Origin: Macrostomum hystrix
Taxonomy: Eukaryota; Animalia; Platyhelminthes
Length of the DNA: 64,000 nt
NCBI GenBank assembly: GCA_950097015.1
Contig: CATNEN010000002.1
Coordinates: 6,076,001 to 6,140,000 of the forward strand
Direction: 5' to 3'
The notes below the pieces were generated by a model. The model was not told where the DNA came from, ran no database searches, and saw nothing but the letters and a program-made list of their open reading frames with translations. Of the stretch, positions 41,043 to 63,556 are shown piece after piece. Positions within the stretch are counted from its first letter, which is position 1. Every line of letters begins with the position of its first letter. The translations under genes were made by a program, and so were the position numbers.

Positions 41043-44000
41043 TCAGCCAATCAGCGATGGCAGGAAGTTCTCCTTGTCCTCGGGCACAGTAGGCGGTACG
41101 GCAACTGCTCCAGCATCGGCGCGATGACGGTGCTGATGAGAATCGTCATCAACGGGAGCCACGCCCACAGACTTCGCAGCCGAAGACGTCGGGGTAGTCG
41201 CCGACGACGAAGAAAACGAAACAGTGTGCTGACTGAGGGCGGCCACCAGTTCTTCGCCGACCCGACTCTTGCCTGAGCTGCCAGCTGCGGCGGCGCCGCC
41301 GACAACATCCGGCTCGGCCAGGCGGACCTGGCGCTCGTGATTGGCCAGCAGGCTGGTCAGGGCTGCCGCCCCGGCGTCTGGCGAGTCGCAGTGACGCAAC
41401 AGCAGCTCGGTGGTGTCCAGAGCCAGGTGGAGCAGCTTCTGGTTGGCCGACACCGCTGGCTGCCTGCCCAGCCTGTCAAATGGGCAGCAATGAGAGCAGG
41501 ATTTATAGCGTCATCCACCAAGACTCGAACACCGGATTAACAATTGATAATTTACAAAGTGCAACTTCATGACTTGCGATCCTAACTCATTAAAGAATTC
41601 TATTGACTCATCCGAGAATCCCCATTGACTCATCCAAGATTCCCAAGGACTCATCCCAGATTCGCATGGACTCATCCCATATTCCCATGGACTCATCCCA
41701 GATTCGCATGGACTCATCCCATATTCCCATGGACTCATCCAATATTCCCATGGACTCATCCAAGATTCGCATGGACTCATCCAAGATTCGCATGGACTCA
41801 TCCCAGATTTGCATGGACTCATCCAATATTCCCATGGACTCATCCCATATTCCCATGGACTCATCCAAGATTCCCATGGACTCATCCAAGACTCCCTAGG
41901 ACTCATCCAAGATCCCCATGAACTCATCTAAGATTCCCATGGACCCATCCAAGATTCGCATGGACTCATCCAAGATTACCATGGACTAATCCCAGAATCC
42001 CATGAACTCATCCCAGATTCGCATGGACTCATTCAAGATTCCCATGGACTCATCCAAGATTCCCATGGACTCATCCAAGATTCCCATGGACTCATCCAAG
42101 ATTCCCATGGACTTATCCCAGAATCCCATTGACTCATCCCATATCCCCACGGACTCATCCCAGATTCGCATGGACTCATCCAATAATCGACTCACTTCTT
42201 GCGCTCAATCTGGCCCAGCAGGGCGGCCCGTTCCTCCCGTCCGTAGGCGGCGCCGAGGTCCTCAGCGAATTGTTTCCAGTTGACCCGCAGCTTGGCCTGC
42301 AGCCGGTCGAAGGTGTCCAACAGGGACTCCAGGCACAGGTGTCGGCGGTCGCTCGGATTGACGCCGACCAGACGACGCAGCTGACGCCGCCAAGTGCCGG
42401 CTTCGTTGGTGTCGAGAAGGCCGGCGCAGAGCCAGTCCAAGCCGACGCCCAGGCCAGCTGGCAGGTTGTTGTGGGCTAGCCAGACCTGAGGTTTTTTAAG
42501 TTTCATATCAGCTTTAATAAGGAAGGGGTTGTAGCCTAGCGGTTAGGACGTCGGGCTTATGACTTGAGGGTCGGGGGTTCGATTCCTGACTCGAACTGGA
42601 ACTATTTGTGTGCTTTAGCAAGACACTTTACTCTGCAATGCTTTTTTTTCAGTTCACCCAGCTGTTAAATGGGTAGCAGCATTAGCTGGGGTAATTGAGG
42701 GTGGGTGTGGCGTCCCCCCAGTCCATGGACTGAACAGCCGTACGCAGTCTTTAGATGCGCAACAGCTGCGGCTGAGCTGTCAGCTGCACTTCTCGCCCAA
42801 TTAGGGGCAGGTGAAAACAATAAATTTTTTCAGGTCAGGTCAGGTGCTCGACTCCTAAGAACAAAGAGCTAGTCTTTATTTTACTTTATAGGTCACACCG
42901 AAGCTAGTAGTAGCATCTATAGGTCATGAGTTCGATTTTGAAAGACAGAAAAGTACATTCTAGCCTTAGCCTTGAATATCTGGCCCAACGGGGCTCTGTG
43001 ATTTCGATATCTCAATGCATTCAGATTGTCGTGATTCCTGTAGATCGTGAGTTCGAATCTTGACAAAAAATCTTACCTGCATAGCGGCCAGGTGGCCGAG
43101 ATTGCCAGGGCGCTGCAGCAGGGCTTCAACAGCCGCGCCTGGCTGTCCGAGCAGCAGCAGCAGCTGGGCGCGCAGCTCGTGCCGGCCGGCCTCGGCGCAG
43201 GCCTTGGCGTAGGCTTCTAGGGTGCGAGTTCGAATCGGGTCGGTGGGCATCAGGCGCAGATTGCACAGCAGCAGGGCCTGCGGGAAGAGACATTCCGGAT
43301 ATTATTCGGCCGCAGGATAAGCAGTAAAAAGTCAGTATCCCAGACTGCGGCTTACACAAAAAATTGAAATACGTACAGAAAAACTGACAGGCAAATAGAC
43401 AGAAAAGTTTTGTACAGCTGTTTATTGCTAATAATAATAATTGCATGAGGGCTGCGGACAATGGCACATCAATTAGTGACACTAGACCCGCAGCCAGCGA
43501 GGAGGCAATTCTGCCCATTTCGCTGACTCCTGAGCACACACGCACTCAGATACTGTAGGCAGGCACAAGCTCACACAGGTGTGTGTACATCTGCCCTGAC
43601 TTTTTCATCGTCAGGCAGAGTACATGTCACTGTGCCTTGGAGGTTGGCCCTCAAGGGAGTAAATTGACGACAAGCCCCCCCAAGCCTTCTCTCAGCGGCT
43701 GCGCCCCAAATGAATGTGGCCTCAACGCGGAATCGAGCGTAAGGACCATGGTGCGAGAGGCAAACGCGTTAACGCTCTGCCACTCAGCTCCTGTGTACAC
43801 ATACAGACAGACAGGCAGACAGACAGGCAGACAGACAGACAGGCAGACAGACAGGCAGGCAGACAGAAACAGACAAGGGGCATCCTGCACAGACCTCCCT
43901 AGCCTTGCCGGCAGTCAGCAGGCAGTCCACCGCGGCCTCGGTGCGCCGGGCGGCCAGCAGGTAGGCGGCGGCCAGGTGCGAATCGCCGCATCGGCGCAGG

Positions 44001-47000
44001 CCATCGGCTTTGGCAACGGCGACGCTGGCGTCCAAATCAGGGGCGGAGGCGGCGGCCAAGCAGCTGACGGCCACGAGCCAGTCGGGCAGGAAGCCGGACG
44101 CGGTGGCCTCCTGTGATATCGTGTTAGATGTACTTTTTAAAAATGTACTTTTAAATTAGCATCAAATCACAAGCTGTCAATCACCTGAACAGCGCGCTGC
44201 ATCCTGCCGGACCAGACCAGCAGCAGCAGGTAATTGTCCAGGTGTCCCAGCCGCAGCAGTCGACGCAGTTCCTTGTCGACAAGGCGAGCCGAATGCGGCC
44301 GGGGCAGCAGCGCCAGCAGGTTGTCCGGCAGGGCGTCGGTTGATTCAACGGCCGGAACAGCATCGCCGGCTGCTGAGGGCCGTCCGGCCAGCAGATGCGC
44401 CAGGAGGGCGGCGAAATCTGCCAGCCTGGCATCCTCGGCGCCGTTGGCAGCGCGCGCGTTCTCGGCCCGACCGGAGCGCGGGAACAGCGCCGGGCGCCGA
44501 CGCGCCGGGTCCGAGCCGTGGGCGCCACGTCGGAGGGCGACGTCGGCCAGAGTGGCCGGGCCAGCGGCGTCGGCGGCCTCGTCGTTGTCCTCGACGACGC
44601 TAATTGAAGAAGCCGCCGGCTCCTTCTCGGTGGCGCTTGGCCGACGAACGAACTGGGTGGGTGCGGCCAGCGATGGCTGGGCCGGGCTTGCCTTGGCCTG
44701 CGGAGGGGGTGCGGCAGAGGGTTGACCTGTTTGTCCCTTGCACCAAGGTCCTGAGTTCGAATCCGCGGCGAGGCTACATATATCTGGGGCGCAGCCGCGG
44801 AGAGAAGGCTTTGGGGGCTTGTCGTGCAATTTACGCCCTTGAGGGCCAACCCTTAAGGCACAGTGAGAGTGTACACTGCCTGACGATGAGAAGTCAGGGC
44901 AGATGTACACACCTGTGTGAGCGTATGCCTGCGTACAGTATCTGTGTGCGAGTGTTCTCATCACTGGGACTAGTTGATACTAGTTGAACAAAAGGGAAAT
45001 GGGATTTCACAGACTGGGATTTGTGAAATACTCACAGTCAGCTCTCGCTTCTTCTGCTCCACCAGACGCAGCAGATCCTCGAGTTCCAGATCTTCAACGC
45101 TGGCATTCAGCTGTGCAGTCACCGCGGCGCCGCTCTCAGATTTGGAATCGGCCGCGGCTTCGTCAGCCAGATCGGCATTGTCGTCGTCTTCGACGGCGCG
45201 CGCCAGGACGCCGTGCGGCAGCGGCGGCCGGTACTGGCGCCCGGAGGTTGGCGGAGATTTCCGAGTCAGACTGGAGACTAGCCAGGCTAGCAGGCAGTGA
45301 TCTTCGCTGCCGCTCAGGCACACGTCTGGATCACCGGCGGACCACTGGACAGTGTAGATCTTGCCAGCGTGGCCGGCGAAGTTGGCCAGGTGGTCGCCAG
45401 TGCGAGCGTTCCACACCTGGACTGTGCCGTCGAACGAGCCGGAGAGCAGGTGATGCGGATTGTGCGGACTCCAGCTCAGGGCGGTAATGCGCTCGCGATG
45501 GCCCTGGGAATTGTGGATATGAGTAGAGCATAATACTTGAGCACATCACTAACACATGTATAGCTTCCAGTGACCCAGTTCACCACACCTTCAGGTGACC
45601 GAGTTCACTACACCTTCAGGTGACCCAGTTCACTACACCTTCAGGTGACCCAGTTCACTACACCTTCAGGTAGCCCAGCTCACTACACCTTCAGGTAGCC
45701 CAGCTCACTACACCTTCAGGTGACCCAGTTCACTACACCTTCAGGTAGCCCAGCTCACTACACCTTCAGGTGACCCAGTTCACTACACCTTCAGGTGACC
45801 CAGTTCACTACACCTTCAGGTAGCCCAGCTCACTACACCTTCAGGTGACCCAGTTTACTACACATTCAGGTAGCCCAGCTCACTACACATTCAGGTGACC
45901 GAGTTCACTACACATTCAGGTAGGCCAGCTCACTACACCTTCAGGTGACCCAGTTTACTACACATTCAGGTAGCCCAGTTCACTACACCTTCAGGTGACC
46001 GAGTTCACTACACCTTCAGGTGACCCAGCTCACTACACCTTCAGGTGACCGAGTTCACTACACCTTCAGGTAGCCCAGCTCACTACACCTTCAGGTAGGC
46101 CAGCTCACTACATCCTTAGGTGACCCAGTTCACTACACCTTCAGGTAGCCCAGCTCACTACACCTTCAGGTGACCCAGTTTACTACACATTCAGGTAGCC
46201 CAGCTCACTACACCTTCAGGTGACCGAGTTCACTACACCTTCAGGTAGCCCAGCTCACTACACCTTCAGGTGACCCAGTTTACTACACATTCAGGTAGCC
46301 CAGTTCACTACACCTTCAGGTGACCGAGTTCACTACACCTTCAGGTGACCCAGTTCACTACACATTCAGGTGACCCAGCTCACTACACCTTCAGGTGACC
46401 CAGTTTACTACACATTCAGGTAGCCCAGCTCACTACACCTTCAGGTGACCGAGTTCACTACACCTTCAGGTAGCCCAGCTCACTACACCTTCAGGTAGGC
46501 CAGCTCACTACATCCTTAGGTGACCCAGTTCACTACACATTCAGGTGACCCAGTTCACTACACCTTCAGGTGACCCAGTTCACTACACCTTCAGGTAGGC
46601 CAGCTCACTACACCTTCAGGTAGGCCAGCTCACTACATCCTTAGGTGACCCAGTTCACTACACATTCAGGTGACCCAGTTCACTACACCTTCAGGTAGCC
46701 CAGCTCACTACACCTCCAGGTGACCCAGTTCACTACACCTTCAGGGTTACCACTACAGCACAAGCTTCACCAAGGTTAGGTAAGGTAGAGCAACCTTCAA
46801 AGTAATCATCGGCTCGGAGATCTCAACGCAGGAAGCGCCGGAGCCAACAGCAACTCCAGTATCCACAAGGAAGATTATGGGACTGTTGGTGCCAATGGCC
46901 AGCCAGTTGCGGCATTCGTCCGAGTATCCCGGATGCCAGGCCATGGCGTTGACAATCTTGCGGCTGAACATAGCCCTGGCTCGCAGAGTAGGAGACCTGA

Positions 47001-50000
47001 CATGAGGGGGCCAATCGAAGATTTCCACCAGGCCGGATTCGTTGCCAACAGCGAGCTGGCTGAAGTCTGGCTTAAACTGGGCGTCGGACCGATTACGGTG
47101 CCGGTTTTTGACCGAGGTCTCCACCGGGTGCGGCATCGGCGGACCGCCTGGGCGAGGGTGCGGGGGCGGATACTTCTCGATTCGTTGTCACTTCACTACT
47201 ACTACATAGGTCTAACGCGTTTGCCTCTCGCACCAAGGTCCCTGCGCTCGATTCCGCCTCGAGGCCATAAACTAAACTCTCTTGCTGAGTGTCTACAGTC
47301 ACAAAATGATGTGACCAGCGGCCACAACCCTGAAAATATTATTATTATCCCCTAGAATTATTCAGCAGTATAATGACTCTTCTAAGAATCCCATTGAATC
47401 ATCTAAGAATCCCATTGAATCATCTAAGAATCCCATTGACTCATCTAAGAATCCCATTGACTCTTCTAAGAATCCCATTGACTCATCTAAGAATCCCATT
47501 GAATCATCTAAGAATCCCATTGACTCATCTAAGAATCCCATTGAATCATCTAAGAATCCCATTGACTCTTCTAAGAATCCCATTGAATCATCTAAGAATC
47601 CCATTGACTCATCTAAGAATCCCATTGAATCATCTAAGAATCCCATTGACTCTTCTAAGAATCCCATTGAATCATCTAAGAATCCCATTGACTCTTCTAA
47701 GAATCCCATTGAATCATCTAAGAATCCCATTGAATCATCTAAGAATCCCATTGACTCTTCTAAGAATCCCATTGAATCATCTAAGAATCCCATTGAATCA
47801 TCTGAGAATCCCATTGAATCATCTAAGAATCCCATTGACTCATTTAAGAATCCTATTGAATCGTCTAAGAATCCCATTGAATCATCTAAGAATCCCATTG
47901 AATCATCTAAGAATCCCTGACTGATTTAAGAATCCCATTGAATCATCTGAGAATGCTCGCACCGGCGGGACACAGTGCCTGTGAGGTATGAGTCAGACCA
48001 GGCCCACGGGCTAAGGTCTGCGATGCCTCACACCTGCAGTCGCTTTTTGAGCAGGCTTGGCAGGAAGGAGACCTGTGCCTTCGGGTGCAGGAATCCCTCC
48101 ACGCTGTCCCGTCAGCTGACCCATGGGTACACGCCCCGCGAGTGTTCAAGGCTGCCCCTAGGGCAGCCGGACAGAATGGGCAACAGCGCTGGATGACCCA
48201 TCCAGGGCCTCTGGCCAAACTGGGTACCTCTAGCCCCGGCTGGAGGGAAAGGTGCCACCCTTTGACCTTAACAGGGTATGCGGCCAGTCCGCAACGTTCG
48301 TGCACCTGTGCGTGATCAGGTACCTCTGGCTACGGCTCTGAGGGAAAGGTGTCACCCATTGACCTTAACAGGGTATGCGGCCAGTCCGCAGTTTTTCGTG
48401 CACCTGTGCGTGATCAGGTACCTCTGGCTACGGCTCTGAGGGAAAGGTGTCACCCATTGACCTTAACAGGGTATGCGGCCAGTCCGCAGCTTCGTGCACC
48501 TGTGCGTGATCAGGTACCTCTGGCTACGGCTCTGAGGGAAAGGTGTCACCCTTTGACCTTAACAGGGTATGCGGCCAGTCCGCAGCTTCGTGCACCTGTG
48601 CGTGATCAGGTACCTCTGGCTACGGCTCTGAGGAAATGGTGTTACCCTTTGACCTTAACAGGGTATGCGGCCAGTCCGCAGCTTCGTGCACCTGTGCGTG
48701 ATCAGGTACCTCTGGCTACGGCTCTGAGGAAATGGTACTACCCTTTGACCCTAACAGGGTATGCGGCCAGTCCGCAGGCCTCGGTACCGGCCTTTTGGTA
48801 CCCTCTAATGTCCCCAGTGCATCCGTGCTGCTGGGCTTTGCCGGACTTCAGTCCGCGCTTTGGTTGGGGAGTATTCCAGCCGCTAACGGTGCCTTTTTGC
48901 TGCTCCCGGCTGGCTTGGGGTGTCGGCCAGTCGGGCTTTTCTCACTCGTGTAACGAGCAGCCCCCCACCTGCTTTTCAGCCATGGCCTCGCCCATCTCTT
49001 CTTTCGAAACCGAGCTAAACTCGGCCGCTCCGGACGCTGCCACTGGCAGGTCCCACGTCCTCGGTGCAGCTGGTGGGACTGAGAATCCCGCCACTGAAAT
49101 CGTCGACCAGAATAAACGCAACCCGAGCCGCAAGCGCTCGGAGGAAGCGCGTGTAAGGCGCAACCAGAAGCGCAACGAACGCCGCCGTAATGCTGCGGCG
49201 GCCGCGACTGGTGGGCGCCCGACACCTGCACACGAGGCGGGTGCGAAAGATGCGGCAGGGCCACCTGGATCCGCCGCCCCCCCCCACCGCCGCTCCGGCC
49301 AGCACCATCTCCAAGGCCGGCACCGACGCCGACGGAAAGAGCGTGGAAGGCGCAGCAGGGCCATCTGGAGCCGCCGCCCCCACCGCCATCACGGCCACCA
49401 CCACCCACAAGGCCGGCACGTCCAACGCCAGCAAGGCCAAGGAGACCTATGCCTCCAAAGCCAAGCGGGAGCCTGTCCAGCCGGCGATCATTGTGGTCGG
49501 CGAGGAACAGGACCTCTCAAACGAGCAGCTCAAAAGCATGCTCAGGACCATCGACGAGGGCCTCACGGACCTGGCACTGGCAGGGACACCAGTCAGCGTT
49601 GTCAGGTCCGAAGCGCAGGAGGGGGCTGTCCTCCTCTGGTGCAAATCGGCGGGGGATAGCCGCCTACTGCGCGATCGGATCAAAGACTTCAAGTGGGGCA
49701 CCGATGTCGGAAGACTGAGGTGCACCACCGAGTCCGAGCGTCCACGGACCCGACGTCATCGTGTCTGGGTCCCCGACGCCTGCTCAATCCGGTCCGGGGA
49801 CCAACTTCGGCAGCTGCTGCTGAAGATGAACCCGGACCTCCCAGCCTCCGGGCTGATCTGCCACGAAACCGTCCGCAAAGAAGCGGAGGGTTTCACGGCG
49901 ATCTACGGCTTCTCCGAAGCCTGGTCCAAAAGGATCCCTCACAAGAGCGTAATCAAACCGGGACTCTACCCGCTGACCATCCTGGATTGTCAGGAGAGGA

Positions 50001-53000
50001 AGGCCGGGGAGGGATCGGAAAATAAGCGGGCCGCTCCTGGCTCTGGGGCGAAAGCTCCGCCAGCTAAGCGGCATGCAACGTCCGCGGACCCCCGCCCGGG
50101 CAAAAATATCCGCATCGCCGAATCCGGCCCCCGAGATCGTAGACCAGCCCGCAACAACCGCAAATCGGGCCTGGTCTTGCGGGCGCTCAGCGAAGCCCGA
50201 GCGCTCAGAGAGCACCTGGAGCGCTCCCGCGCTACAAAAGCGCAAACCTCCCTTCCTCCCAGCCAGCCGCAAAGTGCCGGGACCCACGGAGCGGTGGCCA
50301 CCGACTGGTCTGAGGATCCCCCTCACCGGAAGGAGGCTGCCATCCACACGGACCCGACCCCCGAGGGCGAGGCGTCGAGTGACGGCAGCGACTGCACCGT
50401 TGTTGGGTGGAGCGGCCGGGACACGCAACGGTCAGAGCAGCAGCTCTCCGCAGCGATTCCCGCCGTTCCCTCCACAGCGGTTGCGGGCGCGCCGCTACTC
50501 ATGGAGGTCTGCAGCCCGACCCCGTCTGAGGAGGACGAGCTGCTCAAGGAGACTCCCGCTGGACCATGATCGGCCACACTGGGATCACCTGCCTGCAGGT
50601 TAACCTGCAACACTGCATAGCTGCATCCGTCAATCTGATGCGCTATGTCGAGCTCAACATGCCGGGTCTCATCCTCGTCCAGGAGCCGTGGACTCATAAA
50701 GGTAAGCCTCAAAATGTACCCAATGGGTATCACTGCCTCTACAACAGCCGTCACTGGGAGAACCAAACTCCCAGGGCGTGCATCCTCGTGAGAAACTCCC
50801 TCAACGCCTGGCACAGACCCGACCTTTCTGATCGGGACACCTGTGTCATCCAGACGGAGAACATCCTCCCAGGAAAAACCGTCTTAATCGCCTCGGTTTA
50901 CTTACCGGGCGACAGGCCGGCAGTCCCTGAGGAGCTGATCTCTCTGATTGAAACCTGCGCTGCCAAAAACTATGAGCTCATAGTGGCTGGCGATATTAAC
51001 GCCCACCACACCCACTGGGGGAGCTCTGACATTAACTCGAGAGGCGAGGACCTCCTTGCCTACATCTTAACCACGTCCCTGGAGTTCTGCAACACAGGGA
51101 GCACCCCGACCTTTGACAATGGCCGGTGGTCTGAGGTCATCGACGCCACTCTAGCCACACCTGGGCTTTACCAGAGCCTTAGGGAGTGGCAGGTTCTGCC
51201 GGAGACCTCCCTCTCCGATCACAAATACATCTCTTTCCAACTGGCGGGTGCACGCTGCACTAACCAGATCACTTGGAAAAGGAACGCTAGGAATACCGAT
51301 TGGGAAGCCTTCAGGCATAACCTCGAAGGAACCCAACGAAACCTAAGCCCCCCCGCCAACACCTGCGATGAAGCGGATGAGCTAGCTGAGTTTCTCACCA
51401 ACTCGCTGACCACCGCCTTCGAGGCCTCCTGCCCCCTCAAAGCTTACAGAGGCAAAACTTCGGCCCCATGGTGGAATCCGCAGCTCGGCGAGCTCCGTCG
51501 AACGGCGAAGCGGCTGCACCGCAGGGCCACGAAGACAAAAAACCCGGCTGATCAGGCTGCGTATCTCGAAGCCATCCATAGCTTCAAGAAGGAAGTCAGA
51601 AACGCCAAAAACAGCAAGTGGCGGCAATACTGTGAGGAGCTTGAGGGCACTCGCCCCACCTCCAGAATTGTCAAAGCCCTCACGCTGGACAAAATGTCCA
51701 AGCTTTCGACGGTGAGGAAGGCCGATGGCCGACCCACCGAGAACCCTGGGGAAACGCTCGACACTATGCTCACAGCCTTTTTCCCCAGCGTGCCAGCAGG
51801 GACAGACCCCCCGGATCACACCGAGGGAGGTCATATCCTTGCGACGTCCATCATTACTGAAGACCGGGTTACCAAGGCAGCCCAGTCTTTCAAACCCTTC
51901 AAATCCCCGGGGCCGGACGGCATCATACCAGCCTTCATCCGCGAGGCGGTAAAATGCCATGGCTTCCTCACTAATCTTTGCAAGCTCCTTAAGGCCTGCA
52001 TTGTGCTTGGGTATGTTCCGAAGGCATGGACCGAGGCGAGGGTGGTTTTTATCCCCAAGCCAGGCCGCCCGGACTACCATTCCATTAAATCGTTTCGGCC
52101 AATTAGCCTTACCTCCACCATGGTCAAACTGATGGAGAGATTGGTGCTCTGGCGCCTCCTCTCTGTGGAGCTGAAAAATATGCCACTAAGCGGCAATCAA
52201 CACGCCTTTCGGTCGGGACGTTCCACCGAAAGCGCTCTCCACGCTCTGGTGGACGCTCTGGAAAAGGCCGTCCTCGGGAACGGCTTTGCCCTGAGCATCT
52301 TCCTGGATATTGACGGGGCCTTCGACAACGTTCTCTTCGAGGCGTTTGACAGGGCCCTACGTATGCGGCACACGCATTCGCATCTTAGGAGGTGGATCAT
52401 GTACATGGTCCGCCACCGCACTGCTACGGCACACCTTCTTGGACACCAGCGGACGGTCACTGTCTGCAAAGGTTGCCCACAAGGCGGCGTCCTCTCACCA
52501 GTTCTCTGGAACATGGTTATCGACGAGCTCTTACGAGACTCTCAGCCAGACCCCATCCTAAAGGTCGGCTATGCGGATGATGTTACGGCAGTGGCATCTG
52601 GCCCGGTACCAGAGGCCCTCCGAGACCTTCTGCAAAACTTTATCAACAACGCCGAAAGATGGGCAACTCGCTGCGGTCTGAAGCTCTCCGAGTCTAAGAC
52701 AGCGGCGATCATGTTCACCAGCAAAAACAAATGGCATATTCGCCCCCTGCAGCTGTATGGAAAGGACATCACCTTCCAGAAGCAAACTAAATGCCTGGGC
52801 ATAACGCTCGATCACAGGCTCAGCTGGACTCCTCATGTCCATGCCAAAGCCAAAAAGGCCTTTGCGATCCTGGCGCAGCTGCGCAGGGCGGTGGGCAACA
52901 CGTGGGGTCTCACCCCCAAACGCCTATGGTGGATCTACACTGCTATGGTCAGGCCGGCTGTCTCGTACGCCGGACTGATCTGGGCTAGTGCCCTTCAGCT

Positions 53001-56000
53001 TAAGACCTGCCATGAGACTCTTCGGAGAGTGCAAGGTCGCGCATGTCGGACGATCATGAGCGCCCCGCCATCCGCCCCCTTCGATGGCCTCAACGCCTTC
53101 TTGAACATCCTCCCGCTCGATATCTTTATCCGCGGGGAGGCGGCAAAAACCGCCCGGCGTCTCCTTGATGCCGGTGTGCGCTTCGTCCCCCAACGAGCGG
53201 CAGCGAAGCGAAAGCTCCTGCCGCACACGGACCTTTGCCTGAGAGACTTGGGTGCGAGCAACGGAATCAATGTCCTTACGGACGGTGAACCGTGCTCGCT
53301 CAACCTCCTTCAGCGCTTTAAGGTTCTCATCCCCACCAGGGACCAAGTTAGCGACCACTGGAACACCCAGGAGGTCCACTGCTACACGGACGGATCCATG
53401 AAGGATGGCTCCGCTGGCTTCGGGGTCTGTATCCTTATCAACGGACGTGTTGTCGCCACACACGCCCAACACACTGGAAAATCCTCGAGCGTTTTCCAGA
53501 ACGAGGTCCTGGCCATCAGCTCCTGCGCTGCGGAGTTGAATGAGAAAAACATCTCAGGCAGGACTATCATCTTTCACTCGGACAGTCAGGCTGCTCTGCA
53601 AGCCCTCTGTCACACCACCACAACCTCCCGGACAGTCTCCGACTGTGTCCGGCAGCTCAATAACCTGGCCGGTAAGAATACCGTCAGACTTCAGTGGATA
53701 CCAGGGCACGCCGGTTTCCCTGGTAACGAGCTTGCTGACCACCTGGCCAAGCAGGGAGGAGCCAGCTCTGCGCCGGGCCCCTCCCCCCCGGCTCCGATTC
53801 CGAGCACCGTCATTTATCGTCAGATTAATGATTGGACCGCCAACCTCCATCTTACCCGGTGGAGAAGCACCACTAACTGCCGCCAATCCAAAGCGGCAGT
53901 TCCAGTGCCATCCGCTCGGCTCCGGAAGGTCCTTCTGAACCAGACCCGGAAGGACATCCGGGCCCTCACCATGACCCTCACGGGCCATGGCTGCTACGCC
54001 AGACACTGTTTCCTCCGTGGAGACCTCCGGAGTGAGCTGTGCCCTTTCTGCAACCTTGAGGACGAGGATGCCCTGCACTTCGTCTGCCACTGCCCTTTCT
54101 TCACCAGAGAGAGGCTCAATCACCTCGGACCAAACCCATCAATGGACGATGTTTGCAGATCCGAGAACATCCCGCGGCTCGTCCGGTTCCTAAGGGCTAC
54201 CAGACGAGCCTCTTTCTTCCCCAGCGAGGAACAAGCTGCAGGAAGGACAGAACACGGACCTCCCTGACTGGCCCCGCGCCATCGGCCGATTGCGGGTCTT
54301 TCAGGGATTAGCGGAATGGGCGACTCCCGCCTCCCCGCTGCGTCCGTCGGACCGCCCTGCAGATAAGTCAAGTCAATCATCTGAGAATCCCTGACTGCTT
54401 TAAGAATCCCATTGAATCATCTGAGAATCCCTGACTGCTTTAAGAATCCCATTGAATCATCTGAGAATCCCTGACTGCTTTAAGAATCCCATTGAATCAT
54501 CTGAGAATCCCTGACTGCTTTAAGAATCCCATTGAATCATCTGAGAATCCCTGACTGCTTTAAGAATCCCATTGAATCATCTGAGAATCCCTGACTGCTT
54601 TAAGAATCCCATTGAATCATCTGAGAATCCCTGACTGCTTTAAGAATCCCATTGAATCATCTGAGAATCCCTGACTGCTTTAAGAATCCCATTGAATCAT
54701 CTGAGAATCCCTGACTGCTTTAAGAATCGCTGTCTTATCTAAAATTTCCTTACTCAAAAAAATTTCCTGAATTATCTTATAGACTTAAGAATCTGACTCA
54801 GTCTCAAAATCCAGCCTGCATTAATCTCATTATCCTCACTGGGCAGTTGTCTCGAGATGTCCACAGCTGGATGAGACATCGCCGCGTCGTGCATCAGAAT
54901 GCGATAGCTGCCGACGCTGAACACACTCAGAGCCGACTCCCTGGTGGAATTATCCGCAGTAGATGCAGGTGAAGGTCCCCATCTAACAATATAGACGCAG
55001 CCCCTGTGCTGGCTTGGCGCCAGTCTGACAGCCTTGGAAGGCGAGCTGGCCAAAAAGTCCAGGCAGCCAACCTGTCCAGCGTCAGTGCCGAAGGCCAGCA
55101 GGCCCTCCTGACTCGGATGCCAGGCCAGGGCGCTGACGCGGCCGTTGATGCCCTGCCAGTGCAGGCTGACATCGTAGACTAGGCCGCCTCGGCGCCAGAT
55201 TCTAACGCAGCCATCGCCGCAGCCGACAGCCAGTGTGGTGGGGTTAGTAGGGCTAGGCTGTGAGCACAGCACAAAGCCAGAGGCGGTTGGCACAGCCGTA
55301 TCCAGCTGGGCGGGTCCGTCTGCTGATTTCGGCATGCGCAGCTCGCATATCCACCAGTCGATGCCGAATGTGTACACCCGGTCAGCCCGGCTGGCCAGGC
55401 AGAACACAATGCGACCTAACGGCGTCTTGCCGTTGCTGCCTAGCAACGGAGAATAACCGCACGCGGCTGATGCGTCACGCCTGAGAATGTCGCCCATAGG
55501 CGTAGTGAACAGCAGCTGCTGGTGCTCGCGGGTCCAGGTCAGGCTCACCCAGTACCGACGATCGTCCGACTGGTTCCAGGTGCGCTTCTTGTTCTGAGCG
55601 CTGACTGGCACCTGCGGGTTGACCAAGTCATTGTGGACTCAAAACACTATCAAATGGTGGACTCAAAAGAGACTCAAATGGTTGACTCAAAAGAGACCAT
55701 CAATTTCTATGGACTCATTTCATCAATCTCTATGGACTCATTCCATCAATCTCTATGGACTCATTTCATCAATCTCTATGGACTCATTTCATCAATCTCT
55801 ATGGACTCATTTCATCAATCTCTATGGACTCATTTCATCAATCTCTATGGACTCATTTCATCAATCTCTATGGACTCATTCCATCAATTTCTATAGACTC
55901 ATTCCATCAATCTCTATGGACTCATTCCATCAATTTCTATAGACTCATTTCATCAATCTCTATGGACTCATTTCATCTATCTCTATGGACTCATTCCATC

Positions 56001-57859
56001 AATTTCTATGGACTCATTTCATCAATCTCTATGGACTCATTCCATCAATTTCTATGGACTCATTCCATCAATCTCTATGGACTCATTCCATCAATTTCTA
56101 TGGACTCATTTCATCAATCTCTATGGACTCATTTCATCAATCTCTATGGACTCATTTCATCAATCTCTATGGACTCATTTCATCAATCTCTATGGACTCA
56201 TTTCATCAATCTCTATGGACTCATTCCATCAATTTCTATAGACTCATTTCATCAATCTCTATGGACTCATTTCATCAATCTCTATGGACTCATTCCATCA
56301 ATTTCTATAGACTCATTTCATCAATCTCTATGGACTCATTCCATCTATTTCTATGGACTCATTTCATCAATCTCTATGGACTCATATCATCAATCTCTAT
56401 GGACTCATTTCATCAATCTCTATGGACTCATTTCATCAATCTCTATGGACTCATTTCATCAATCTCTATGGACTCATTCCATCAATTTCTATGGACTCAT
56501 TTCATCAATCTCTATGGACTCATTTCATCAATCTCTATGGACTCATTTCATCAATCTCTATGGACTCATTCCATCAATTTCTATGGACTCATTCCATCAA
56601 TTTCTATGGACTCATTTCATCAATCTCTATGGACTCATTCCATCAATTTCTATGGACTCATTTCATCAATTTCTATGGACTCATTTCATCAATCTCTATG
56701 GACTCATTTCATCAATCTCTATGGACTCATTTCATCAATCTCTATGGACTCATTTCATCAATCTCTATGGACTCATTTCATCAATCTCTATGGACTCATT
56801 TCATCTATTTCTATGGACTCATTTCATCAATCTCTATGGACTCATTCCATCAATCTCTATGGACTCATTTCATCAATTTCTATGGACTCATTTTATCAAT
56901 CTCTATGGACTCATTCCATCAATTTCTATGGACTCATTCCATCAATTTCTATGGACTCATTCCATCAATTTCTATGGACTCATTTCATCAATCTCTATGG
57001 ACTCATTCCATCAATTTCTATGGACTCATTTCATCAATCTCTATGGACTCATTTCATCAATCTCTATGGACTCATTTCATCAATCTCTATGGACTCATTT
57101 CATCAATCTCTATGGACTCATTTCATCAATCTCTATGGACTCATTCCATCAATCTCTATGGACTCATTTCATCAATCTCTATAAACTCACTCTACTAATC
57201 ATTGTGTACTCATTCTCCCAATGGCTCATTGAACTCACCTTGATCGTCGCTGAGCAGACAACGGCATCCTCGGAGCCGAGTCGCCACAGCTTCAGCAGCT
57301 GATCCCGACCTACGCTGGCCAAGTCGGCCTCTTTAGCAGCCTCGGTGGCGGACTGGGAATCCTGGAGCTGCCGATGAGGACTGGGATTCCAGGCCAGGTT
57401 AATTACTTCGCCAGTGTGAGCAGCCAGCTGATGCAGCACTGAGAGGCTGCCGGCGGATTGGGCGGCCTTGCTGAGCTTGAGAACGCACAGCTGACCTGAG
57501 CGTCCAGCACAGGCTAGAATTTCTGAGGAGTCAGGCTTCCACAGCACCTGTTTTGAGCACAGTTTAGGTGTTTTGAGTATGCGTCTGTTAATGTTACGAT
57601 TCTAATCAAAGTCTATTGATTTTCTTATCCTAAGGGCATACTTCAGTGTGAATATGAACTATCCCAATCCACTTCACCCCTAGGGGAAAACAAAAATCCA
57701 CTTGGTCAGATTGCTTAAATATTTTAACCATTATCTCTTTCAAATCAAACCCATCAAACTCAATCCCCTTCAATCTAATCCTAAAATTAAGTACAGGTAA
57801 TCCAGCAATGTTTCGCACCTGATTGACACCTTGCTCCTTGCTGAAGGGTCGGCACTGGA

Positions 57860-57911
<52 letters not shown>

Positions 57912-58493
57912 CCTGGGCAGCCATCGCAGCACCACAACGTGGCCGCTCTCGCAGCCGACTGCTAGCGGGCGAGCTCCGGCATTGTCGCCGTCAACGGCCA
58001 CCTCGGCAGCGGACAAGCAGGAAGGCAGCGGCTCCTTTAGTCCCAGAGAGGACGGGTTGAATTCCTTTAGGCAGCGCCGGCCGCAGAAATCCCAAACTCG
58101 AACAAAGCCGTCGTGTCCGCAGGTGGCAAATTTGGCGGCCGCCGCTGTCGATAATTCAGCCAACTCGCCGTCCTCGAGCGGCTGTTGCTGCTGCTGATCT
58201 GTGCAGTCGCCATTGAAATCCTCGATAGCAGCAATGCCGCTGCATTTCACCTGATGAGCCGGCAGGAATCCCAGGTAATATAGGGAATTATTGGTCTTGT
58301 TAGCATTAGCCGCGTCCAACACCTGGTTGCCATTGGTAACAGGACGCCTAGCCAGGTAAATAACATTCTGTCTGGCCGCGTACGCAACTACGCCGTTGCT
58401 AAGGACGCAAGCGACGCTGCTGTCGTAATAGTTTGGCGAAGCGATGAGAGAGGGCTGCATAGTCGCCTCAGAGTCCATTAGTTGGTGATCCAT
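41043..58493 (-). CDS. GEMIN5: Gemin5 (WD40 beta-propellers + TPR-like region; SMN complex), 10 exons, about 1408 aa
   Basis: Exons 58493(or 58478)-57819, 57547-57239, 55611-54840, 47147-46795, 45503-45036, 44697-44185, 44110-43895, 43277-43077, 42485-42196, 41472-41043, all GT-AG and phase-consistent. Matches remembered human GEMIN5 segments: SPNYY..VAYAAR; YDVSLHWQGINGRVSALAWHPSQEGLLAFGTDAGQVG; HRGCVYIVRWGP; GHRERITALSWSPH..SGSFDGTVQVW; ALLLCNLRLMPTDPI. Confidence 0.93.
41605..42182. repeat. 21-bp minisatellite (CATGGACTCATCCAAGATTCC), GEMIN5 intron 9
   Basis: Tandem array. Confidence 0.95.
42531..42745 (+). mobile_element. full tRNA-derived SINE (family A) with conserved central domain
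   Basis: A box tagcctagcggttagg; B box ggttcgattcc; central tgctttagcaagacactttactc...cccagctgttaaatgggta; tail cagtccatggactgaacag. Confidence 0.8.
43531..43791 (-). mobile_element. tRNA-derived SINE (family B), GEMIN5 intron 7
   Basis: Reverse complement starts ggagctgagtggcagagcg...gctcgattcc; body homologous to 44701-44965 and 63300-63556. Confidence 0.85.
44701..44965 (+). mobile_element. tRNA-derived SINE (family B), GEMIN5 intron 5
   Basis: B box gagttcgaatcc; body shares ctgcctgacgatga-aagtcagggcagatgtacacac with the other copies. Confidence 0.85.
45568..46745. repeat. 25-bp minisatellite (GGTGACCCAGTTCACTACACCTTCA), GEMIN5 intron 4
   Basis: About 47 units. Confidence 0.95.
47205..47270 (+). 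mobile_element. SINE family B head fragment
   Basis: taacgcgtttgcctctcgcaccaaggtcc...gctcgattccgc matches the head of the 43791 copy. Confidence 0.7.
47372..47940. repeat. 21-bp minisatellite (AAGAATCCCATTGAATCATCT)
   Basis: Tandem array left of the retrotransposon. Confidence 0.95.
47955..48180 (+). ncRNA. HDV-like self-cleaving ribozyme (predicted) at the retrotransposon 5' end
   Basis: P1 GCUCGC 47955-60 / GCGAGU 48138-43 (G1-U wobble); P2 CCCAU 48120-24 / AUGGG 48176-80; P3 GGG/CCC; L3 UACACGC; P1.1 AC/GU; P4 GGCUGCCC-CUA-GGGCAGCC; J4/2 CAGA with candidate catalytic C at 48172. Confidence 0.85.
48240..48777 (+). repeat. 96-bp tandem monomers (about 5.5) in the retrotransposon 5' UTR
   Basis: TGCACC starts at 48301, 48399, 48495, 48591 and 48687. 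Confidence 0.95.
48982..50569 (+). CDS. retrotransposon ORF1 (gag-like; DUF4780-like central domain) with a 1-nt frameshift at a C9 run near 49277-49285
   Basis: ATG 48982 in good context (gccATGg); MASPISS... continues into the 49190-50569 frame at the C run; central AIIVVGEEQDLSNEQL...GAVLLWCKS recalls LOA-type ORF1. Confidence 0.75.
50566..54267 (+). CDS. retrotransposon ORF2: AP endonuclease, reverse transcriptase, RNase H, C-terminal zinc-knuckle-like; intact, 1233 aa
   Basis: LQVNLQH, ILVQEP, GDINAHH, SDH (APE); KSPGPDGI, FRPISL, LDIDGAFD, QGGVLSP, YADD (RT); YTDGS, HSDSQAAL, WIPGHAGFPGNELADHLAK (RNase H); CPFC...HFVCHCP. Confidence 0.97.
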   Translation: MIGHTGITCLQVNLQHCIAASVNLMRYVELNMPGLILVQEPWTHKGKPQNVPNGYHCLYNSRHWENQTPRACILVRNSLNAWHRPDLSDRDTCVIQTENILPGKTVLIASVYLPGDRPAVPEELISLIETCAAKNYELIVAGDINAHHTHWGSSDINSRGEDLLAYILTTSLEFCNTGSTPTFDNGRWSEVIDATLATPGLYQSLREWQVLPETSLSDHKYISFQLAGARCTNQITWKRNARNTDWEAFRHNLEGTQRNLSPPANTCDEADELAEFLTNSLTTAFEASCPLKAYRGKTSAPWWNPQLGELRRTAKRLHRRATKTKNPADQAAYLEAIHSFKKEVRNAKNSKWRQYCEELEGTRPTSRIVKALTLDKMSKLSTVRKADGRPTENPGETLDTMLTAFFPSVPAGTDPPDHTEGGHILATSIITEDRVTKAAQSFKPFKSPGPDGIIPAFIREAVKCHGFLTNLCKLLKACIVLGYVPKAWTEARVVFIPKPGRPDYHSIKSFRPISLTSTMVKLMERLVLWRLLSVELKNMPLSGNQHAFRSGRSTESALHALVDALEKAVLGNGFALSIFLDIDGAFDNVLFEAFDRALRMRHTHSHLRRWIMYMVRHRTATAHLLGHQRTVTVCKGCPQGGVLSPVLWNMVIDELLRDSQPDPILKVGYADDVTAVASGPVPEALRDLLQNFINNAERWATRCGLKLSESKTAAIMFTSKNKWHIRPLQLYGKDITFQKQTKCLGITLDHRLSWTPHVHAKAKKAFAILAQLRRAVGNTWGLTPKRLWWIYTAMVRPAVSYAGLIWASALQLKTCHETLRRVQGRACRTIMSAPPSAPFDGLNAFLNILPLDIFIRGEAAKTARRLLDAGVRFVPQRAAAKRKLLPHTDLCLRDLGASNGINVLTDGEPCSLNLLQRFKVLIPTRDQVSDHWNTQEVHCYTDGSMKDGSAGFGVCILINGRVVATHAQHTGKSSSVFQNEVLAISSCAAELNEKNISGRTIIFHSDSQAALQALCHTTTTSRTVSDCVRQLNNLAGKNTVRLQWIPGHAGFPGNELADHLAKQGGASSAPGPSPPAPIPSTVIYRQINDWTANLHLTRWRSTTNCRQSKAAVPVPSARLRKVLLNQTRKDIRALTMTLTGHGCYARHCFLRGDLRSELCPFCNLEDEDALHFVCHCPFFTRERLNHLGPNPSMDDVCRSENIPRLVRFLRATRRASFFPSEEQAAGRTEHGPP
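54375..54727. repeat. 40-bp minisatellite (dimer-like derivative of the 21-bp unit)
   Basis: Unit AATCATCTGAGAATCCCTGACTGCTTTAAGAATCCCATTG, about 9 copies. Confidence 0.95.
55700..57185. repeat. 23-bp minisatellite (CTATGGACTCATTTCATCAATCT), GEMIN5 intron 2
   Basis: About 65 units. Confidence 0.97.
57861..57911 (-). repeat. (GGC)17 coding microsatellite, poly-Gly in GEMIN5 exon 1
   Basis: Perfect trinucleotide run in frame. Confidence 0.9.
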
Positions 58494-58764
58494 TTTACAG
58501 CTGAAAGTTGGATTTGGAACCGAACAACTTTGGCTCACTGGTTAAATAAACAAATCCTGTCTATGATAACCCTTTTTAAAACTGAGGACACTTCAGAATA
58601 AATTAAATCACCAACAAGATCATCGTCGAAATAGAAGAGCCAAGCTCACATGTTCTCACACTGCTCCTAAGTGAGATCTCTTTCTTGTCTCTCCAGTGTC
58701 TCATCTCTGTCCAGTCTTGTCGGGATTTATCCAAACTTATCTGCCTTATCTCTCCTGTGTCTAA

Positions 58765-63299: not shown

Positions 63300-63556
63300 G
63301 ATGATGAGCACACAGGTACTCAGATACTGTACACAGGCATGCACTCAAACAAGTATATAAATCTGCCCTTTCTAATTGTCAGGCAGTGTACACTCTCACT
63401 GTGCCTAGGAGGTGGGCCCTCAATGGTGTAAATTGCACGACAAGCCCACAAGCTTTCTCTCCATGGCTGCAATCCAATTTAATGTGGCGTCACTGCTAAA
63501 TTGAGCTTAGGGACATTAGAGTGATAGGCAAATGCTTTACAACTCAGCCACTGACC
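63300..63556 (-). mobile_element. tRNA-derived SINE (family B), diverged
   Basis: Homologous to 43531-43791 (tcaggcagtgtacactctcactgtgcc, aaattgcacgacaagccc). Confidence 0.75.

What the first reader, a model, noticed from the sequence alone, without database searches (positions are those of the whole stretch)
47955..48180. Complete HDV-like ribozyme whose cleavage site coincides exactly with the retrotransposon 5' end
Seen: every element of the nested double pseudoknot can be paired by hand. P1 is 6 bp with the G1-U wobble. P2 is CCCAU/AUGGG and P3 is GGG/CCC. L3 UACACGC keeps the U20/G25 equivalents. P1.1 is a covaried AC/GU pair (HDV has CC/GG). A UCAA linker echoes HDV GCAA, P4 is a perfect 8-bp hairpin, and J4/2 is C-A-G-A (HDV has C-G-A-A). 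G1 is the first base after the independently defined TSD. Known: HDV-like ribozymes process the 5' ends of R2, RTE, LOA (Baggins) and L1Tc elements. Inference: this element is cut out of read-through transcripts and needs no promoter of its own. The class is known; I cannot tell whether this family or host is described. Because the insertion is antisense, the GEMIN5 pre-mRNA would not be cleaved.
Basis: partly seen in the sequence, partly recalled or inferred. Interest (0 to 1): 0.9.

Follow-up and report, generated by a model that had tools for sequence, protein, structure and literature searches.

The report
HDV-like ribozyme heading flatworm LINE elements
The first 226 bases of this intact flatworm LINE retrotransposon fold into a hepatitis-delta-virus-like self-cleaving ribozyme whose predicted cut site is the exact first base of 69 independent genomic copies; this is a well-supported new example of a known way for such elements to trim their own RNA.

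Summary
The element (47955-54374; ORF1, then ORF2 with APE, RT and RNase H domains; 14-bp TSD) starts at G47955.

In the same genome, 86 fetched loci with 69 different upstream flanks all start at that base. A covariance model finds at least 150 copies of the core.

A generic HDV descriptor hits once in the window, at this site. It hits about 1e-7 times per base in shuffled sequence.

Diverged relatives keep the fold through compensatory changes in P1, P1.1, P2 and P4. P3, the L3 U and G, and a C three bases before the P2 3' strand never change. In one relative P1 covaries and its contig starts exactly at the predicted G1.

Rfam's HDV models do not detect this ribozyme. Cleavage itself was not tested, and no usable RNA reads were available.

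Verdict: very probably a genuine HDV-like 5'-processing ribozyme with a 159-nt structured J1/2 domain. It is a new member of a known kind, in a Macrostomum-type flatworm.

Side result: the same ribozyme-plus-repeat leader (93-97% identical) heads several LINE lineages whose ORF1 proteins are only 34-58% identical.

The scan's first readers noted similar ribozymes seven times elsewhere in this genome. The GEMIN5 context was not confirmed.

The parts
47941..47954 (+). Left target-site duplication AATCATCTGAGAAT, inside a 21/40-bp satellite
   Evidence: The same 14 bases recur at 54375-54388, and the satellite phase continues across the insertion.
47955..47960 (+). P1 5' strand GCUCGC. G47955 is the predicted first base after the cleavage site and the first base of the element.
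   Evidence: 68 of 69 independent junctions start here with GCTCGC. P1 covaries in L070: GCCUGC/GCAGGC.
47961..48119 (+). J1/2 peripheral domain (159 nt). It is a self-contained multibranch fold closed by a 9-bp helix, 47964-47972 with 48105-48113 (P1.2-like).
   Evidence: -81.9 kcal/mol, z = -5.1. A homologous 163-nt domain is present in L070. Large HDV-like ribozymes with a J1/2 helix are described in PMC4908430.
48120..48124 (+). P2 5' strand CCCAU
   Evidence: Pairs with 48176-48180. Four of five pairs show changes on both sides in relatives. Other versions are CCCAAA/UUUGGG, CUCAGA/UCUGAG, CCUCAGA/UCUGAGG and CCCAGA/UCUGGG.
48125..48127 (+). P3 5' strand GGG
   Evidence: Pairs with 48135-48137. 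Invariant in all versions.
48128..48134 (+). L3 UACACGC. U at position 1 and G at position 6 are invariant in relatives. Positions 2-3 (AC) form P1.1.
   Evidence: 48134 is C or U between subfamilies.
48135..48137 (+). P3 3' strand CCC
48138..48143 (+). P1 3' strand GCGAGU
   Evidence: Relatives have GCGAGC, GCAGGC, GUGGGU and AUGAGU.
48144..48145 (+). P1.1 3' strand GU (pairs G48144-C48130 and U48145-A48129)
   Evidence: L070 has CU/AG, so both pairs are compensated. L031 and L071 keep C-G and have U.U at the other pair.
48146..48149 (+). J1.1/4 linker UCAA
   Evidence: L070 has GCAA, L031 has UAAA and L071 has UAA.
48150..48168 (+). P4 hairpin: 8 bp with loop CUA
   Evidence: Relatives have perfect hairpins of 7-11 bp with other sequences. 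Two G000 subfamilies carry one or two internal mismatches, at 48155 and 48165.
48169..48175 (+). J4/2 GGA-C-AGA. C48172 is the candidate catalytic cytosine, three bases before the P2 3' strand.
   Evidence: A C at the same spacing is conserved in all five versions. The three bases that follow it vary: AGA, AAA, UGA, GUG, UGC.
48176..48180 (+). P2 3' strand AUGGG; the ribozyme ends here
48181..48222 (+). Conserved post-ribozyme leader, including the hairpin CUGGAU-GACCC-AUCCAG (48189-48205)
   Evidence: Conserved in L031 and in the organism E contig
48223..48777 (+). 5.8 tandem copies of a 96-bp unit in the 5' UTR. This is part of the leader shared between LINE lineages.
49190..50569 (+). ORF1 (459 aa; weak DUF4780 match)
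50566..54267 (+). ORF2 (1233 aa): AP endonuclease, reverse transcriptase, RNase H
54268..54374 (+). 3' UTR ending ...GATAAGTCAAGTC, with no poly(A)
   Evidence: The homologous 3' end in L070 is seen.
54375..54388 (+). Right target-site duplication AATCATCTGAGAAT

Best explanation
Bases 47955-48180 encode a split HDV-like self-cleaving ribozyme at the very 5' end of an intact APE-RT-RNase H LINE element.

Proposed mechanism, with each step marked as shown or inferred:
1. Inferred: transcripts that start upstream of the element, from host or neighbouring promoters, run into it.
2. Shown by comparative analysis: the RNA folds into the nested double pseudoknot (P1, P1.1, P2, P3, P4).
3. Inferred, by analogy with PMC4908430: the 159-nt J1/2 domain, closed by a 9-bp helix, brings P1 and P2 together.
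4. Inferred from family chemistry: C48172 in J4/2 acts as the general acid/base. The chain is cut 5' of G47955, leaving a 5'-OH on the element RNA and releasing all upstream sequence.
5. Shown: new full-length copies begin at exactly G47955 whatever the flank. This follows from target-primed reverse transcription copying the processed RNA to its end.

The ribozyme and the 96-bp repeat array behind it form a leader module that several LINE lineages of this genome share.
For: 1. All pairings are present as described. The MFE fold recovers P1, P3, P4 and a closed J1/2 domain, with z = -4.4 and -5.1.

2. 69 independent insertions start at the same base with unrelated flanks. Contigs of three other organisms carry the same family with the junction at 47955.

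3. The descriptor finds 1 hit in the window, against about 1e-7 per base in 56 Mb of shuffles.

4. Covariation in relatives found through ORF1 and in laid contigs:
- P1: GCUCGC/GCGAGU versus GCCUGC/GCAGGC (two compensated pairs).
- P1.1: AC/GU versus CU/AG.
- P2: five mutually compensated versions.
- P4: four unrelated perfect hairpins.
- Unchanged everywhere: P3, the L3 U and G, and the J4/2 C with its spacing.

5. Formal count on the model-fitted alignment A4:
- 94.8% of cells are paired, against 27-50% when partners are slid.
- 8 of 18 pairs change on both sides, against 0-1 when slid.
- 0 of 500 shuffles reach the observed values.

6. The L070 contig begins exactly at the G1 predicted from its own P1 3' strand, yet runs about 0.5 kb past the element's 3' end. 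The relaxed descriptor finds that P1 partner only at position 1.

7. Long J1/2 inserts are documented in active HDV-like ribozymes: 23 to over 700 nt in R2 (PMC3774820), and a structured 'pinch' domain (PMC4908430).
Against: - No cleavage assay was done and there is no RNA 5'-end evidence. All runs that could be laid were assembled contigs, which cannot show RNA ends.
- Rfam's HDV-type models give no hit on the window, on the isolated core, or genome-wide (RF00094, RF01788).
- Variation within the family shows no compensation. Two abundant G000 subfamilies carry mismatches inside P4 (48155 C>A, 48165 A>T), and several changes break J1/2 pairs.
- The three bases after the J4/2 cytosine are not conserved: AGA here, GUG in L031, UGC in L070. 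The first P1 pair is G-C, not G.U, in L031 and L070.
- One P1.1 pair is U.U in L031 and L071.
- The comparative set is small (four family-level versions plus two partial ones). The helix alignment was made by me or fitted to the model.
Confidence: 0.85

Rival explanations
1. The uniform 5' end comes from an internal promoter that starts transcription precisely at G47955, as in I, jockey or L1Tc-type elements. On this reading the conserved fold is a non-catalytic structured leader, for example for protein binding or translation.
For: A precise shared 5' end is what a fixed start site would also give. The leader is long, strongly conserved and repetitive beyond the ribozyme, so it has other functions too. 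The J4/2 bases after the C vary. L1Tc shows that a promoter and a ribozyme can occupy the same bases (PMC3383444).
Against: A DNA-level promoter does not explain compensatory changes that keep the first six bases paired to a strand 180 nt away. It also does not explain retention of the HDV topology with the C, the L3 U and G, and the G1 position. No initiator-like motif is shared at +1 between the window family (GCTCGCA) and L070 (GCCTGCA).
Confidence: 0.1
2. The family once had, or its master copies have, an active ribozyme, but this particular copy or subfamily is inactive and merely inherits the sequence.
For: Retrotransposon copies decay. Relatives show deviations such as CUGC or CGUG in J4/2 and U.U in P1.1. 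G000 subfamilies carry P4 mismatches.
Against: The window copy belongs to the youngest subfamily: 99-100% identical copies, both ORFs intact, a perfect P4, the G.U wobble and CAGA in J4/2. It is the version closest to the canonical motif.
Confidence: 0.04
3. The resemblance to the HDV motif is a chance match in a GC-rich, highly structured 5' UTR.
For: GC-rich sequence offers many helices. My descriptor was written after seeing the candidate. At about 1e-7 per base, tens of chance cores are expected in a 220-Mb genome.
Against: The core lies within the first 230 nt of the element and pairs with exactly its first six bases. The helices covary in four diverged versions, and the slid and shuffled controls fail.
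Confidence: 0.01

Closest known systems
Large HDV-like ribozymes with a structured J1/2 (P1.2) peripheral domain, e.g. the drz-Agam-2 family of Anopheles (PMC4908430; Rfam RF01788)
   Same: Nested double pseudoknot in which P1 and P2 are separated by a long insert closed by a helix. The cleavage site is at the first base of P1.
   Different: No detectable sequence-model similarity: RF01788 finds nothing in this genome. Here J1/2 is a 159-nt multibranch domain that is itself conserved between LINE lineages. The host is a flatworm.
R2 element HDV-like ribozymes, including a predicted one in the planarian Schmidtea (PMC3774820)
   Same: 5' processing of a LINE RNA out of a co-transcript. The P1 to P1' distance is variable (23 to over 700 nt). 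Few bases are invariant apart from the catalytic C and some L3 positions. P4 is variable.
   Different: R2 is site-specific in 28S rDNA, uses a restriction-like endonuclease and is read through by Pol I. This element has an AP endonuclease plus RNase H and inserts at many unrelated sites. Its 5' junctions are uniform, whereas R2 elements that cleave at the junction show variable junctions.
L1Tc/ingi Pr77 hallmark (L1TcRz) of trypanosomatids (PMC3185411, PMC3383444, PMC4035085)
   Same: An HDV-like ribozyme occupies the first bases of an APE-RT-RNase H LINE. The same 5' hallmark is shared by several autonomous and non-autonomous element families.
   Different: L1TcRz is compact (77 nt) and doubles as an internal promoter. 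Here the ribozyme is 226 nt with a large J1/2 domain, and promoter activity is untested.
Baggins1 (LOA clade) and RTE HDV-like ribozymes (Ruminski et al. 2011, cited in PMC4908430 and PMC3774820; that paper is not held in the library and I did not read it)
   Same: [quoted passage not shown]
   Different: The clade of the present element was not resolved here. No sequence comparison was possible.
Twister-variant ribozymes at the 5' end of Perere-3 in Schistosoma mansoni (PMC8501958)
   Same: A flatworm LINE whose 5' end, next to the TSD, is the cleavage site of a self-cleaving ribozyme. Transcription from host promoters is proposed.
   Different: A different ribozyme class (twister, not HDV-like) and a different LINE clade (RTE).

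Membership tests
HDV-like self-cleaving ribozymes (structural class) | Nested double pseudoknot in the order P1-P2-P3-L3-P3'-P1'-P1.1-P4-J4/2-P2' | tested here: met
   All strands are in the required order. The pairing is supported by covariation in P1, P1.1, P2 and P4.
HDV-like self-cleaving ribozymes (structural class) | Cleavage site immediately 5' of the first base of P1, usually a G in a G.U wobble | tested here: met
   G47955.U48143 is the first P1 pair and G47955 is the element's first base in 69 junctions. Relatives L031 and L070 have G-C there. Cleavage itself was not observed.
HDV-like self-cleaving ribozymes (structural class) | Catalytic cytosine in J4/2, a few bases before the P2 3' strand | tested here: met
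   C48172 is conserved with identical spacing (C plus 3 nt) in all five versions. Its catalytic role cannot be tested here.
HDV-like self-cleaving ribozymes (structural class) | A 3-bp P3 capped by a 7-8-nt L3 that carries the U and G of the reverse wobble and supplies the P1.1 bases | tested here: met
   GGG/CCC is invariant. L3 is 7-8 nt, with U at position 1 and G at position 6 invariant. P1.1 has 2 bp here and in L070, and 1 bp plus U.U in L031 and L071.
HDV-like self-cleaving ribozymes (structural class) | Purine-rich end of J4/2 (the A-A that docks on P3 in HDV, as I recall it) | tested here: inconclusive
   AGA here, AAA in organism B and UGA in L071, but GUG in L031 and UGC in L070. 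Those two are single contigs that may be decayed copies.
HDV-like self-cleaving ribozymes (structural class) | Divalent-ion-dependent self-scission giving a 5'-OH and a 2',3'-cyclic phosphate | not testable with these tools
   Needs in vitro transcription and cleavage assays.
Rfam HDV-type sequence families (RF00094 HDV_ribozyme, RF01788 drz-agam-2-2 and the rest of Rfam 15) | Score at or above the family's gathering threshold | tested here: not met
   No HDV-type hit at E up to 10 on 40000-64000 or on the isolated core. No hit genome-wide for RF00094 or RF01788. These models cannot represent the pseudoknots or the 159-nt insert, so this rules out membership of those sequence families, not of the structural class.
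LOA clade of LINEs (as first-stage notes call similar elements) | Placement of the RT in the LOA clade by phylogeny | not tested
   Only the domain order was established: APE, RT and RNase H in ORF2, and a DUF4780-like ORF1. That order is shared by the I, LOA, Ingi, Tad and related clades. No reference set was available.

The most novel reading that the evidence does not exclude
The ribozyme is part of an exchangeable 5' leader about 0.45-0.9 kb long: the HDV-like ribozyme with its J1/2 domain, followed by a variable array of 96-bp units. This leader is kept 93-97% identical across at least three or four LINE lineages of this genome whose ORF1 proteins are only 34-58% identical. The orthologous lineage in another organism (L031) carries a clearly diverged leader. 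That pattern implies ongoing transfer of the ribozyme leader between LINE families within a species, for example by template switching, and so concerted evolution of the leader. On this view the ribozyme behaves as a shared, mobile 5'-processing cassette rather than a lineage-bound feature.
Probability: 0.55. Interest if true: 0.6.

Novelty: new member of a known kind. Interest (0 to 1): 0.45.

Why it matters
It explains how the most abundant young LINE copies of this flatworm genome acquire an exact, promoter-independent 5' end. At least 150 copies carry an intact core.

It adds a sequence family of HDV-like ribozymes that current Rfam models miss. It extends the 'large J1/2 domain' architecture to a free-living flatworm that is used as a laboratory model genus.

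For annotation, G1 of the motif marks full-length element starts.

The shared leader gives a tractable case for studying how 5' modules move between LINE lineages. The natural variants (G.U versus G-C at the cleavage site, different J4/2 tails, P4 mismatches) form a ready-made mutational series for ribozyme biochemistry.

Tried and rejected
1. Rfam scans of 40000-64000, of the isolated core, and genome-wide with RF00094 and RF01788 gave no HDV-type hit.

2. Covariation within the family: copies are 96-100% identical. The 12 shared variants show no compensation and some break P4 or J1/2 pairs. This is uninformative rather than contrary.

3. A metagenome pattern scan with a conserved post-ribozyme motif returned six chance matches in bacterial coding sequence.

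4. A 'compact ribozyme' reading of L031 (GCUCGC seven bases before P2) was rejected. That stretch is homologous to the 3' part of our J1/2 domain, and the contig starts inside J1/2.

5. The two variant cores seen in other organisms' contigs (P1' AUGAGU; P2 CCCAGA/UCUGGG) are absent from this genome, and their contigs could not be fetched. The prediction that those elements start with GCUCAU remains untested. So does the prediction that L071's family starts with GCCCAC.

6. Read laying: all runs were assembled contigs, so no RNA starts, strands or levels could be read. A possibly-RNA contig of organism D spans the junction with 87 nt of flank, which is uninformative.

7. Several ORF1 and ORF2 homologues (Macrostomum lignano UniRef models) are not on record as contigs. 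A second ORF1 search added nothing.

8. A more distant LINE (L102, 37% ORF2 identity) shows no HDV-like core in its first 700 nt, even with a relaxed descriptor. This is neither support nor refutation, because its true 5' end is unknown.

10. GEMIN5: only weak WD40 matches in minus-strand ORFs 57630-58538 and 44970-45416, and no Gemin5 hit among solved structures.
Full report
**What is at the site**

- P1: GCUCGC 47955-47960 with GCGAGU 48138-48143. The first pair is the G.U wobble.
- P2: CCCAU 48120-48124 with AUGGG 48176-48180.
- P3: GGG 48125-48127 with CCC 48135-48137, capped by L3 UACACGC.
- P1.1: A48129-U48145 and C48130-G48144.
- Linker UCAA, then a perfect 8-bp P4 (48150-48168).
- J4/2: GGA-C48172-AGA.

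The topology is that of the HDV nested double pseudoknot.

A pseudoknot-free MFE fold of 47955-48185 recovers P1, P3 and P4 on its own (z = -4.4). The 159-nt J1/2 stretch folds alone into a closed multibranch domain. Its 9-bp closing helix (47964-47972 with 48105-48113) starts 3 nt after P1 and ends 6 nt before P2 (-81.9 kcal/mol, z = -5.1).

**The element**

Downstream lie 5.8 copies of a 96-bp tandem unit (48223-48777). They are followed by ORF1 (49190-50569, 459 aa) and an overlapping ORF2 (50566-54267, 1233 aa). ORF2 has AP-endonuclease, reverse-transcriptase and RNase H domains.

The element ends at 54374 without poly(A). It is flanked by the 14-bp duplication AATCATCTGAGAAT, inside a 21/40-bp satellite whose phase continues across the insertion. 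Both ORFs are open.

Earlier notes of this scan, and the UniRef names of the homologues, point to a Macrostomum-type flatworm.

**The 5' end is exact and independent of the TSD**

The first 268 bases recur at 96-100% identity throughout the 220-Mb genome. Among the loci fetched, 86 carry the 5' end, with 69 different 30-nt upstream flanks. The flanks are unrelated to each other: pairwise identity over the last 15 nt peaks at 4 of 15.
- 68 copies start GCTCGC and one starts GCCCGC.
- Three segmentally duplicated copies are truncated inside J1/2.

A covariance model of the 73-nt core region scores at least 150 genomic copies above 91 bits.

Contigs from three other organisms carry the same family, with flank sequence ending exactly at 47955.

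**Is the motif more than chance?**

I wrote a descriptor using generic HDV features:
- P2 of 5 bp and P3 of 3 bp.
- L3 of 7-8 nt with U at position 1 and G at position 6.
- A 2-bp P1.1.
- A P4 hairpin.
- C-N-R-A before the P2 3' strand.
- A G-initiated 6-bp P1 within 300 nt upstream.

It hits once on both strands of the window, at this site, with G1 at 47955. In dinucleotide shuffles it finds 4 cores in 25.5 Mb (element composition) and 3 in 31 Mb (window composition), about 1e-7 per base.

The descriptor was written after seeing the candidate, so these rates are generous to it. Even so, a core within the first 230 nt of an element has an expectation of order 1e-5. The further requirement that the strand 3' of P3 pairs with exactly the first six bases is unlikely on top of that.

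**Comparative evidence**

Copies within the genome are too similar to help. The 12 variants shared by two or more copies show no compensation. Two abundant subfamilies carry mismatches inside P4 (48155 C>A, 48165 A>T). 48134 is C or U.

Diverged relatives came from ORF1 searches and their contigs:
- L031: a metagenome contig whose ORF1 is 52% identical.
- L070: a Logan contig holding a full element, with ORF2 61% identical.
- L071: from the same run as L070.
- Two partial versions read from loose ends of laid contigs of organisms B and E.

Anchored on the invariant GGG-L3-CCC, the helices read as follows.

| Helix | Window | L031 | L070 | L071 | Organism E | Organism B |
|---|---|---|---|---|---|---|
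| P1 | GCUCGC/GCGAGU | 3' strand GCGAGC | GCCUGC/GCAGGC | 3' strand GUGGGU | not seen | 3' strand AUGAGU |
| P1.1 | AC/GU | UC/GU (C-G plus U.U) | CU/AG | UC/GU (C-G plus U.U) | not seen | AC/GU |
| P2 | CCCAU/AUGGG | CCCAAA/UUUGGG | CUCAGA/UCUGAG | CCUCAGA/UCUGAGG | CCCAGA/UCUGGG | 5' strand CCCAU |
| P4 | 8 bp | 8 bp, two pairs swapped | 11 bp, unrelated sequence | 7 bp with a 14-nt loop | not seen | not seen |

- In P1, the window and L070 differ by two compensated pairs.
- In P1.1, both pairs are compensated between the window and L070.
- P3, the L3 U (position 1) and G (position 6), and a C exactly three bases before the P2 3' strand are unchanged in every version.

On the model-fitted alignment A4, which lacks L070:
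- 94.8% of cells are paired, against 27-50% when partners are slid by 1-3 columns.
- 8 of 18 pairs change on both sides, against 0-1 when slid.
- None of 500 shuffles reaches the observed values.

That alignment is fitted to the structure and holds few sequences. It also contains one spurious reverse-strand P4 row, which only adds 'same' counts in P4.

**The P1 prediction holds in a second lineage**

L070's P1 3' strand (GCAGGC, 189-194) predicts an RNA that starts GCCUGC. The 6492-nt contig begins with exactly those bases. The relaxed descriptor finds that partner nowhere else upstream, and the MFE fold pairs 1-6 with 189-194.

The same contig runs about 0.5 kb beyond the element's 3' end. 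A break at the 5' boundary but not at the 3' boundary is what a 5'-processed, 3'-read-through transcript would give. I could not learn whether that run is RNA, so this is only suggestive.

**Deviations**

- Rfam detects nothing. This is expected for covariance models that cannot encode the pseudoknots or a 159-nt insert. It does mean the RNA is not a member of those sequence families.
- The three bases after the J4/2 cytosine vary: AGA, AAA, UGA, GUG, UGC.
- The first P1 pair is G-C in L031 and L070.
- One P1.1 pair is U.U in L031 and L071.

PMC3774820 reports that R2 ribozymes conserve little beyond the catalytic C and four other positions, that P4 is highly variable, and that P1 and P1' can be 23 to over 700 nt apart. 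PMC4908430 shows that a helix in J1/2 activates large HDV-like ribozymes by pinching P1 and P2 together. The architecture here is therefore within the known range.

**Mechanism and rivals**

Best reading (0.85): read-through transcripts fold, and C48172-dependent self-scission cuts 5' of G47955. The processed RNA is reverse-transcribed to its end, which gives the uniform junctions. The fold and the junctions are shown. Cleavage, its chemistry and the source of transcription are inferred.

The main rival is a precise internal start site with a non-catalytic leader (0.1). It cannot explain why the first six bases covary with a strand 180 nt away. A promoter could still coexist, as in L1Tc (PMC3383444).

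**Side finding: a shared leader**

Between the window copy and loci such as L033, L013, L011, L025, L085, L090 and L099, nucleotide similarity (93-97%) covers only the ribozyme and the 96-bp array. It stops at about 440-890 nt from G1.

| Locus | ORF1 identity to the window's ORF1 |
|---|---|
| L002 | 99% (similar along the whole fetched length) |
| L011 | about 58% (short stretch) |
| L013 | 41% |
| L033 | 34% |

These identities come from tblastn. L011's ORF1 fragment is closest to that of L031, yet L011 carries the genome's own leader while L031's leader is only about 78-85% identical.

So one leader heads several LINE lineages and appears to be homogenised within the species. This recalls the Pr77 hallmark shared across L1Tc/ingi-clade elements (PMC4035085).

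**Context claim**

Minus-strand ORFs on both sides of the element give only weak WD40 matches and no Gemin5-specific hit. The statement about GEMIN5 pre-mRNA is unverified and does not bear on the main finding.

**Novelty**

HDV-like ribozymes at LINE 5' ends are established for R2, R4, RTE, L1Tc and Baggins (PMC3774820, PMC4908430, PMC3185411). In flatworms a predicted R2 ribozyme (Schmidtea) and twister variants (Schistosoma Perere-3, PMC8501958) are described.

Full-text searches found no paper linking HDV-like ribozymes with Macrostomum.

First readers of this scan flagged similar motifs seven times elsewhere in this genome. I did not test those.

This is a new member of a known kind, with good comparative support and moderate interest.

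Noticed in passing
window 47955-48800; loci L033, L013, L011, L025, L085, L090, L099 versus L002: The ribozyme plus 96-bp-repeat leader is 93-97% identical between copies whose downstream sequence is unalignable. Their ORF1 proteins are only 34-58% identical to the window's. One leader therefore heads at least 3-4 LINE lineages in this genome.
   Followed up: partly
window 48223-48777; L069 1-180; L031 232-322: The 96-bp unit in the 5' UTR varies in copy number between copies, from about 1.5 to 8. It is conserved in other organisms' elements. Its function (promoter monomer, translation element or protein site) is unknown.
   Followed up: no
L070 1-6125 (Logan ERR14788467 contig of 6492 nt): The contig starts exactly at the predicted G1 of its own ribozyme but continues about 0.5 kb past the element's 3' end. 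That is the pattern expected of a 5'-cleaved, 3'-read-through transcript. The library type is unknown.
   Followed up: partly
upstream flanks of 69 G000 insertions (position -1): The base just before G1 is C 25, T 21, A 16, G 7. G is under-represented. This may reflect target preference or base composition and was not analysed.
   Followed up: no
window 46002-46745, 47374-47954, 54375-54728, 55698-57189: The element sits in a cluster of different short-period satellites (25, 21, 40 and 23 bp). The 40-bp array to its right is 100% homogeneous over 8.9 copies.
   Followed up: no
window 57630-58538 (-) and 44970-45416 (-): Minus-strand ORFs on both sides of the element have weak WD40 beta-propeller matches. 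This is compatible with an intron of a WD-repeat gene in antisense orientation, but no Gemin5-specific match was obtained.
   Followed up: partly
window 48189-48205: A hairpin CUGGAU-GACCC-AUCCAG lies immediately after the ribozyme. It is conserved in L031 and in the organism E contig (as CCGGA..UCCGG, a compensated change). It may be a further functional RNA element of the leader.
   Followed up: no
window 42525-42594 (+) and 63488-63555 (-): Two weak tRNA-like matches below Rfam's gathering score (21.7 and 20.7 bits). They may be tRNA-derived repeats.
   Followed up: no
L102 1-700 (Logan ERR688347): A more distant LINE of the same domain architecture (ORF2 37% identical, ORF1 with DUF4780) shows no HDV-like core upstream of ORF1, even with a relaxed descriptor. 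Its true 5' end is unknown.
   Followed up: partly
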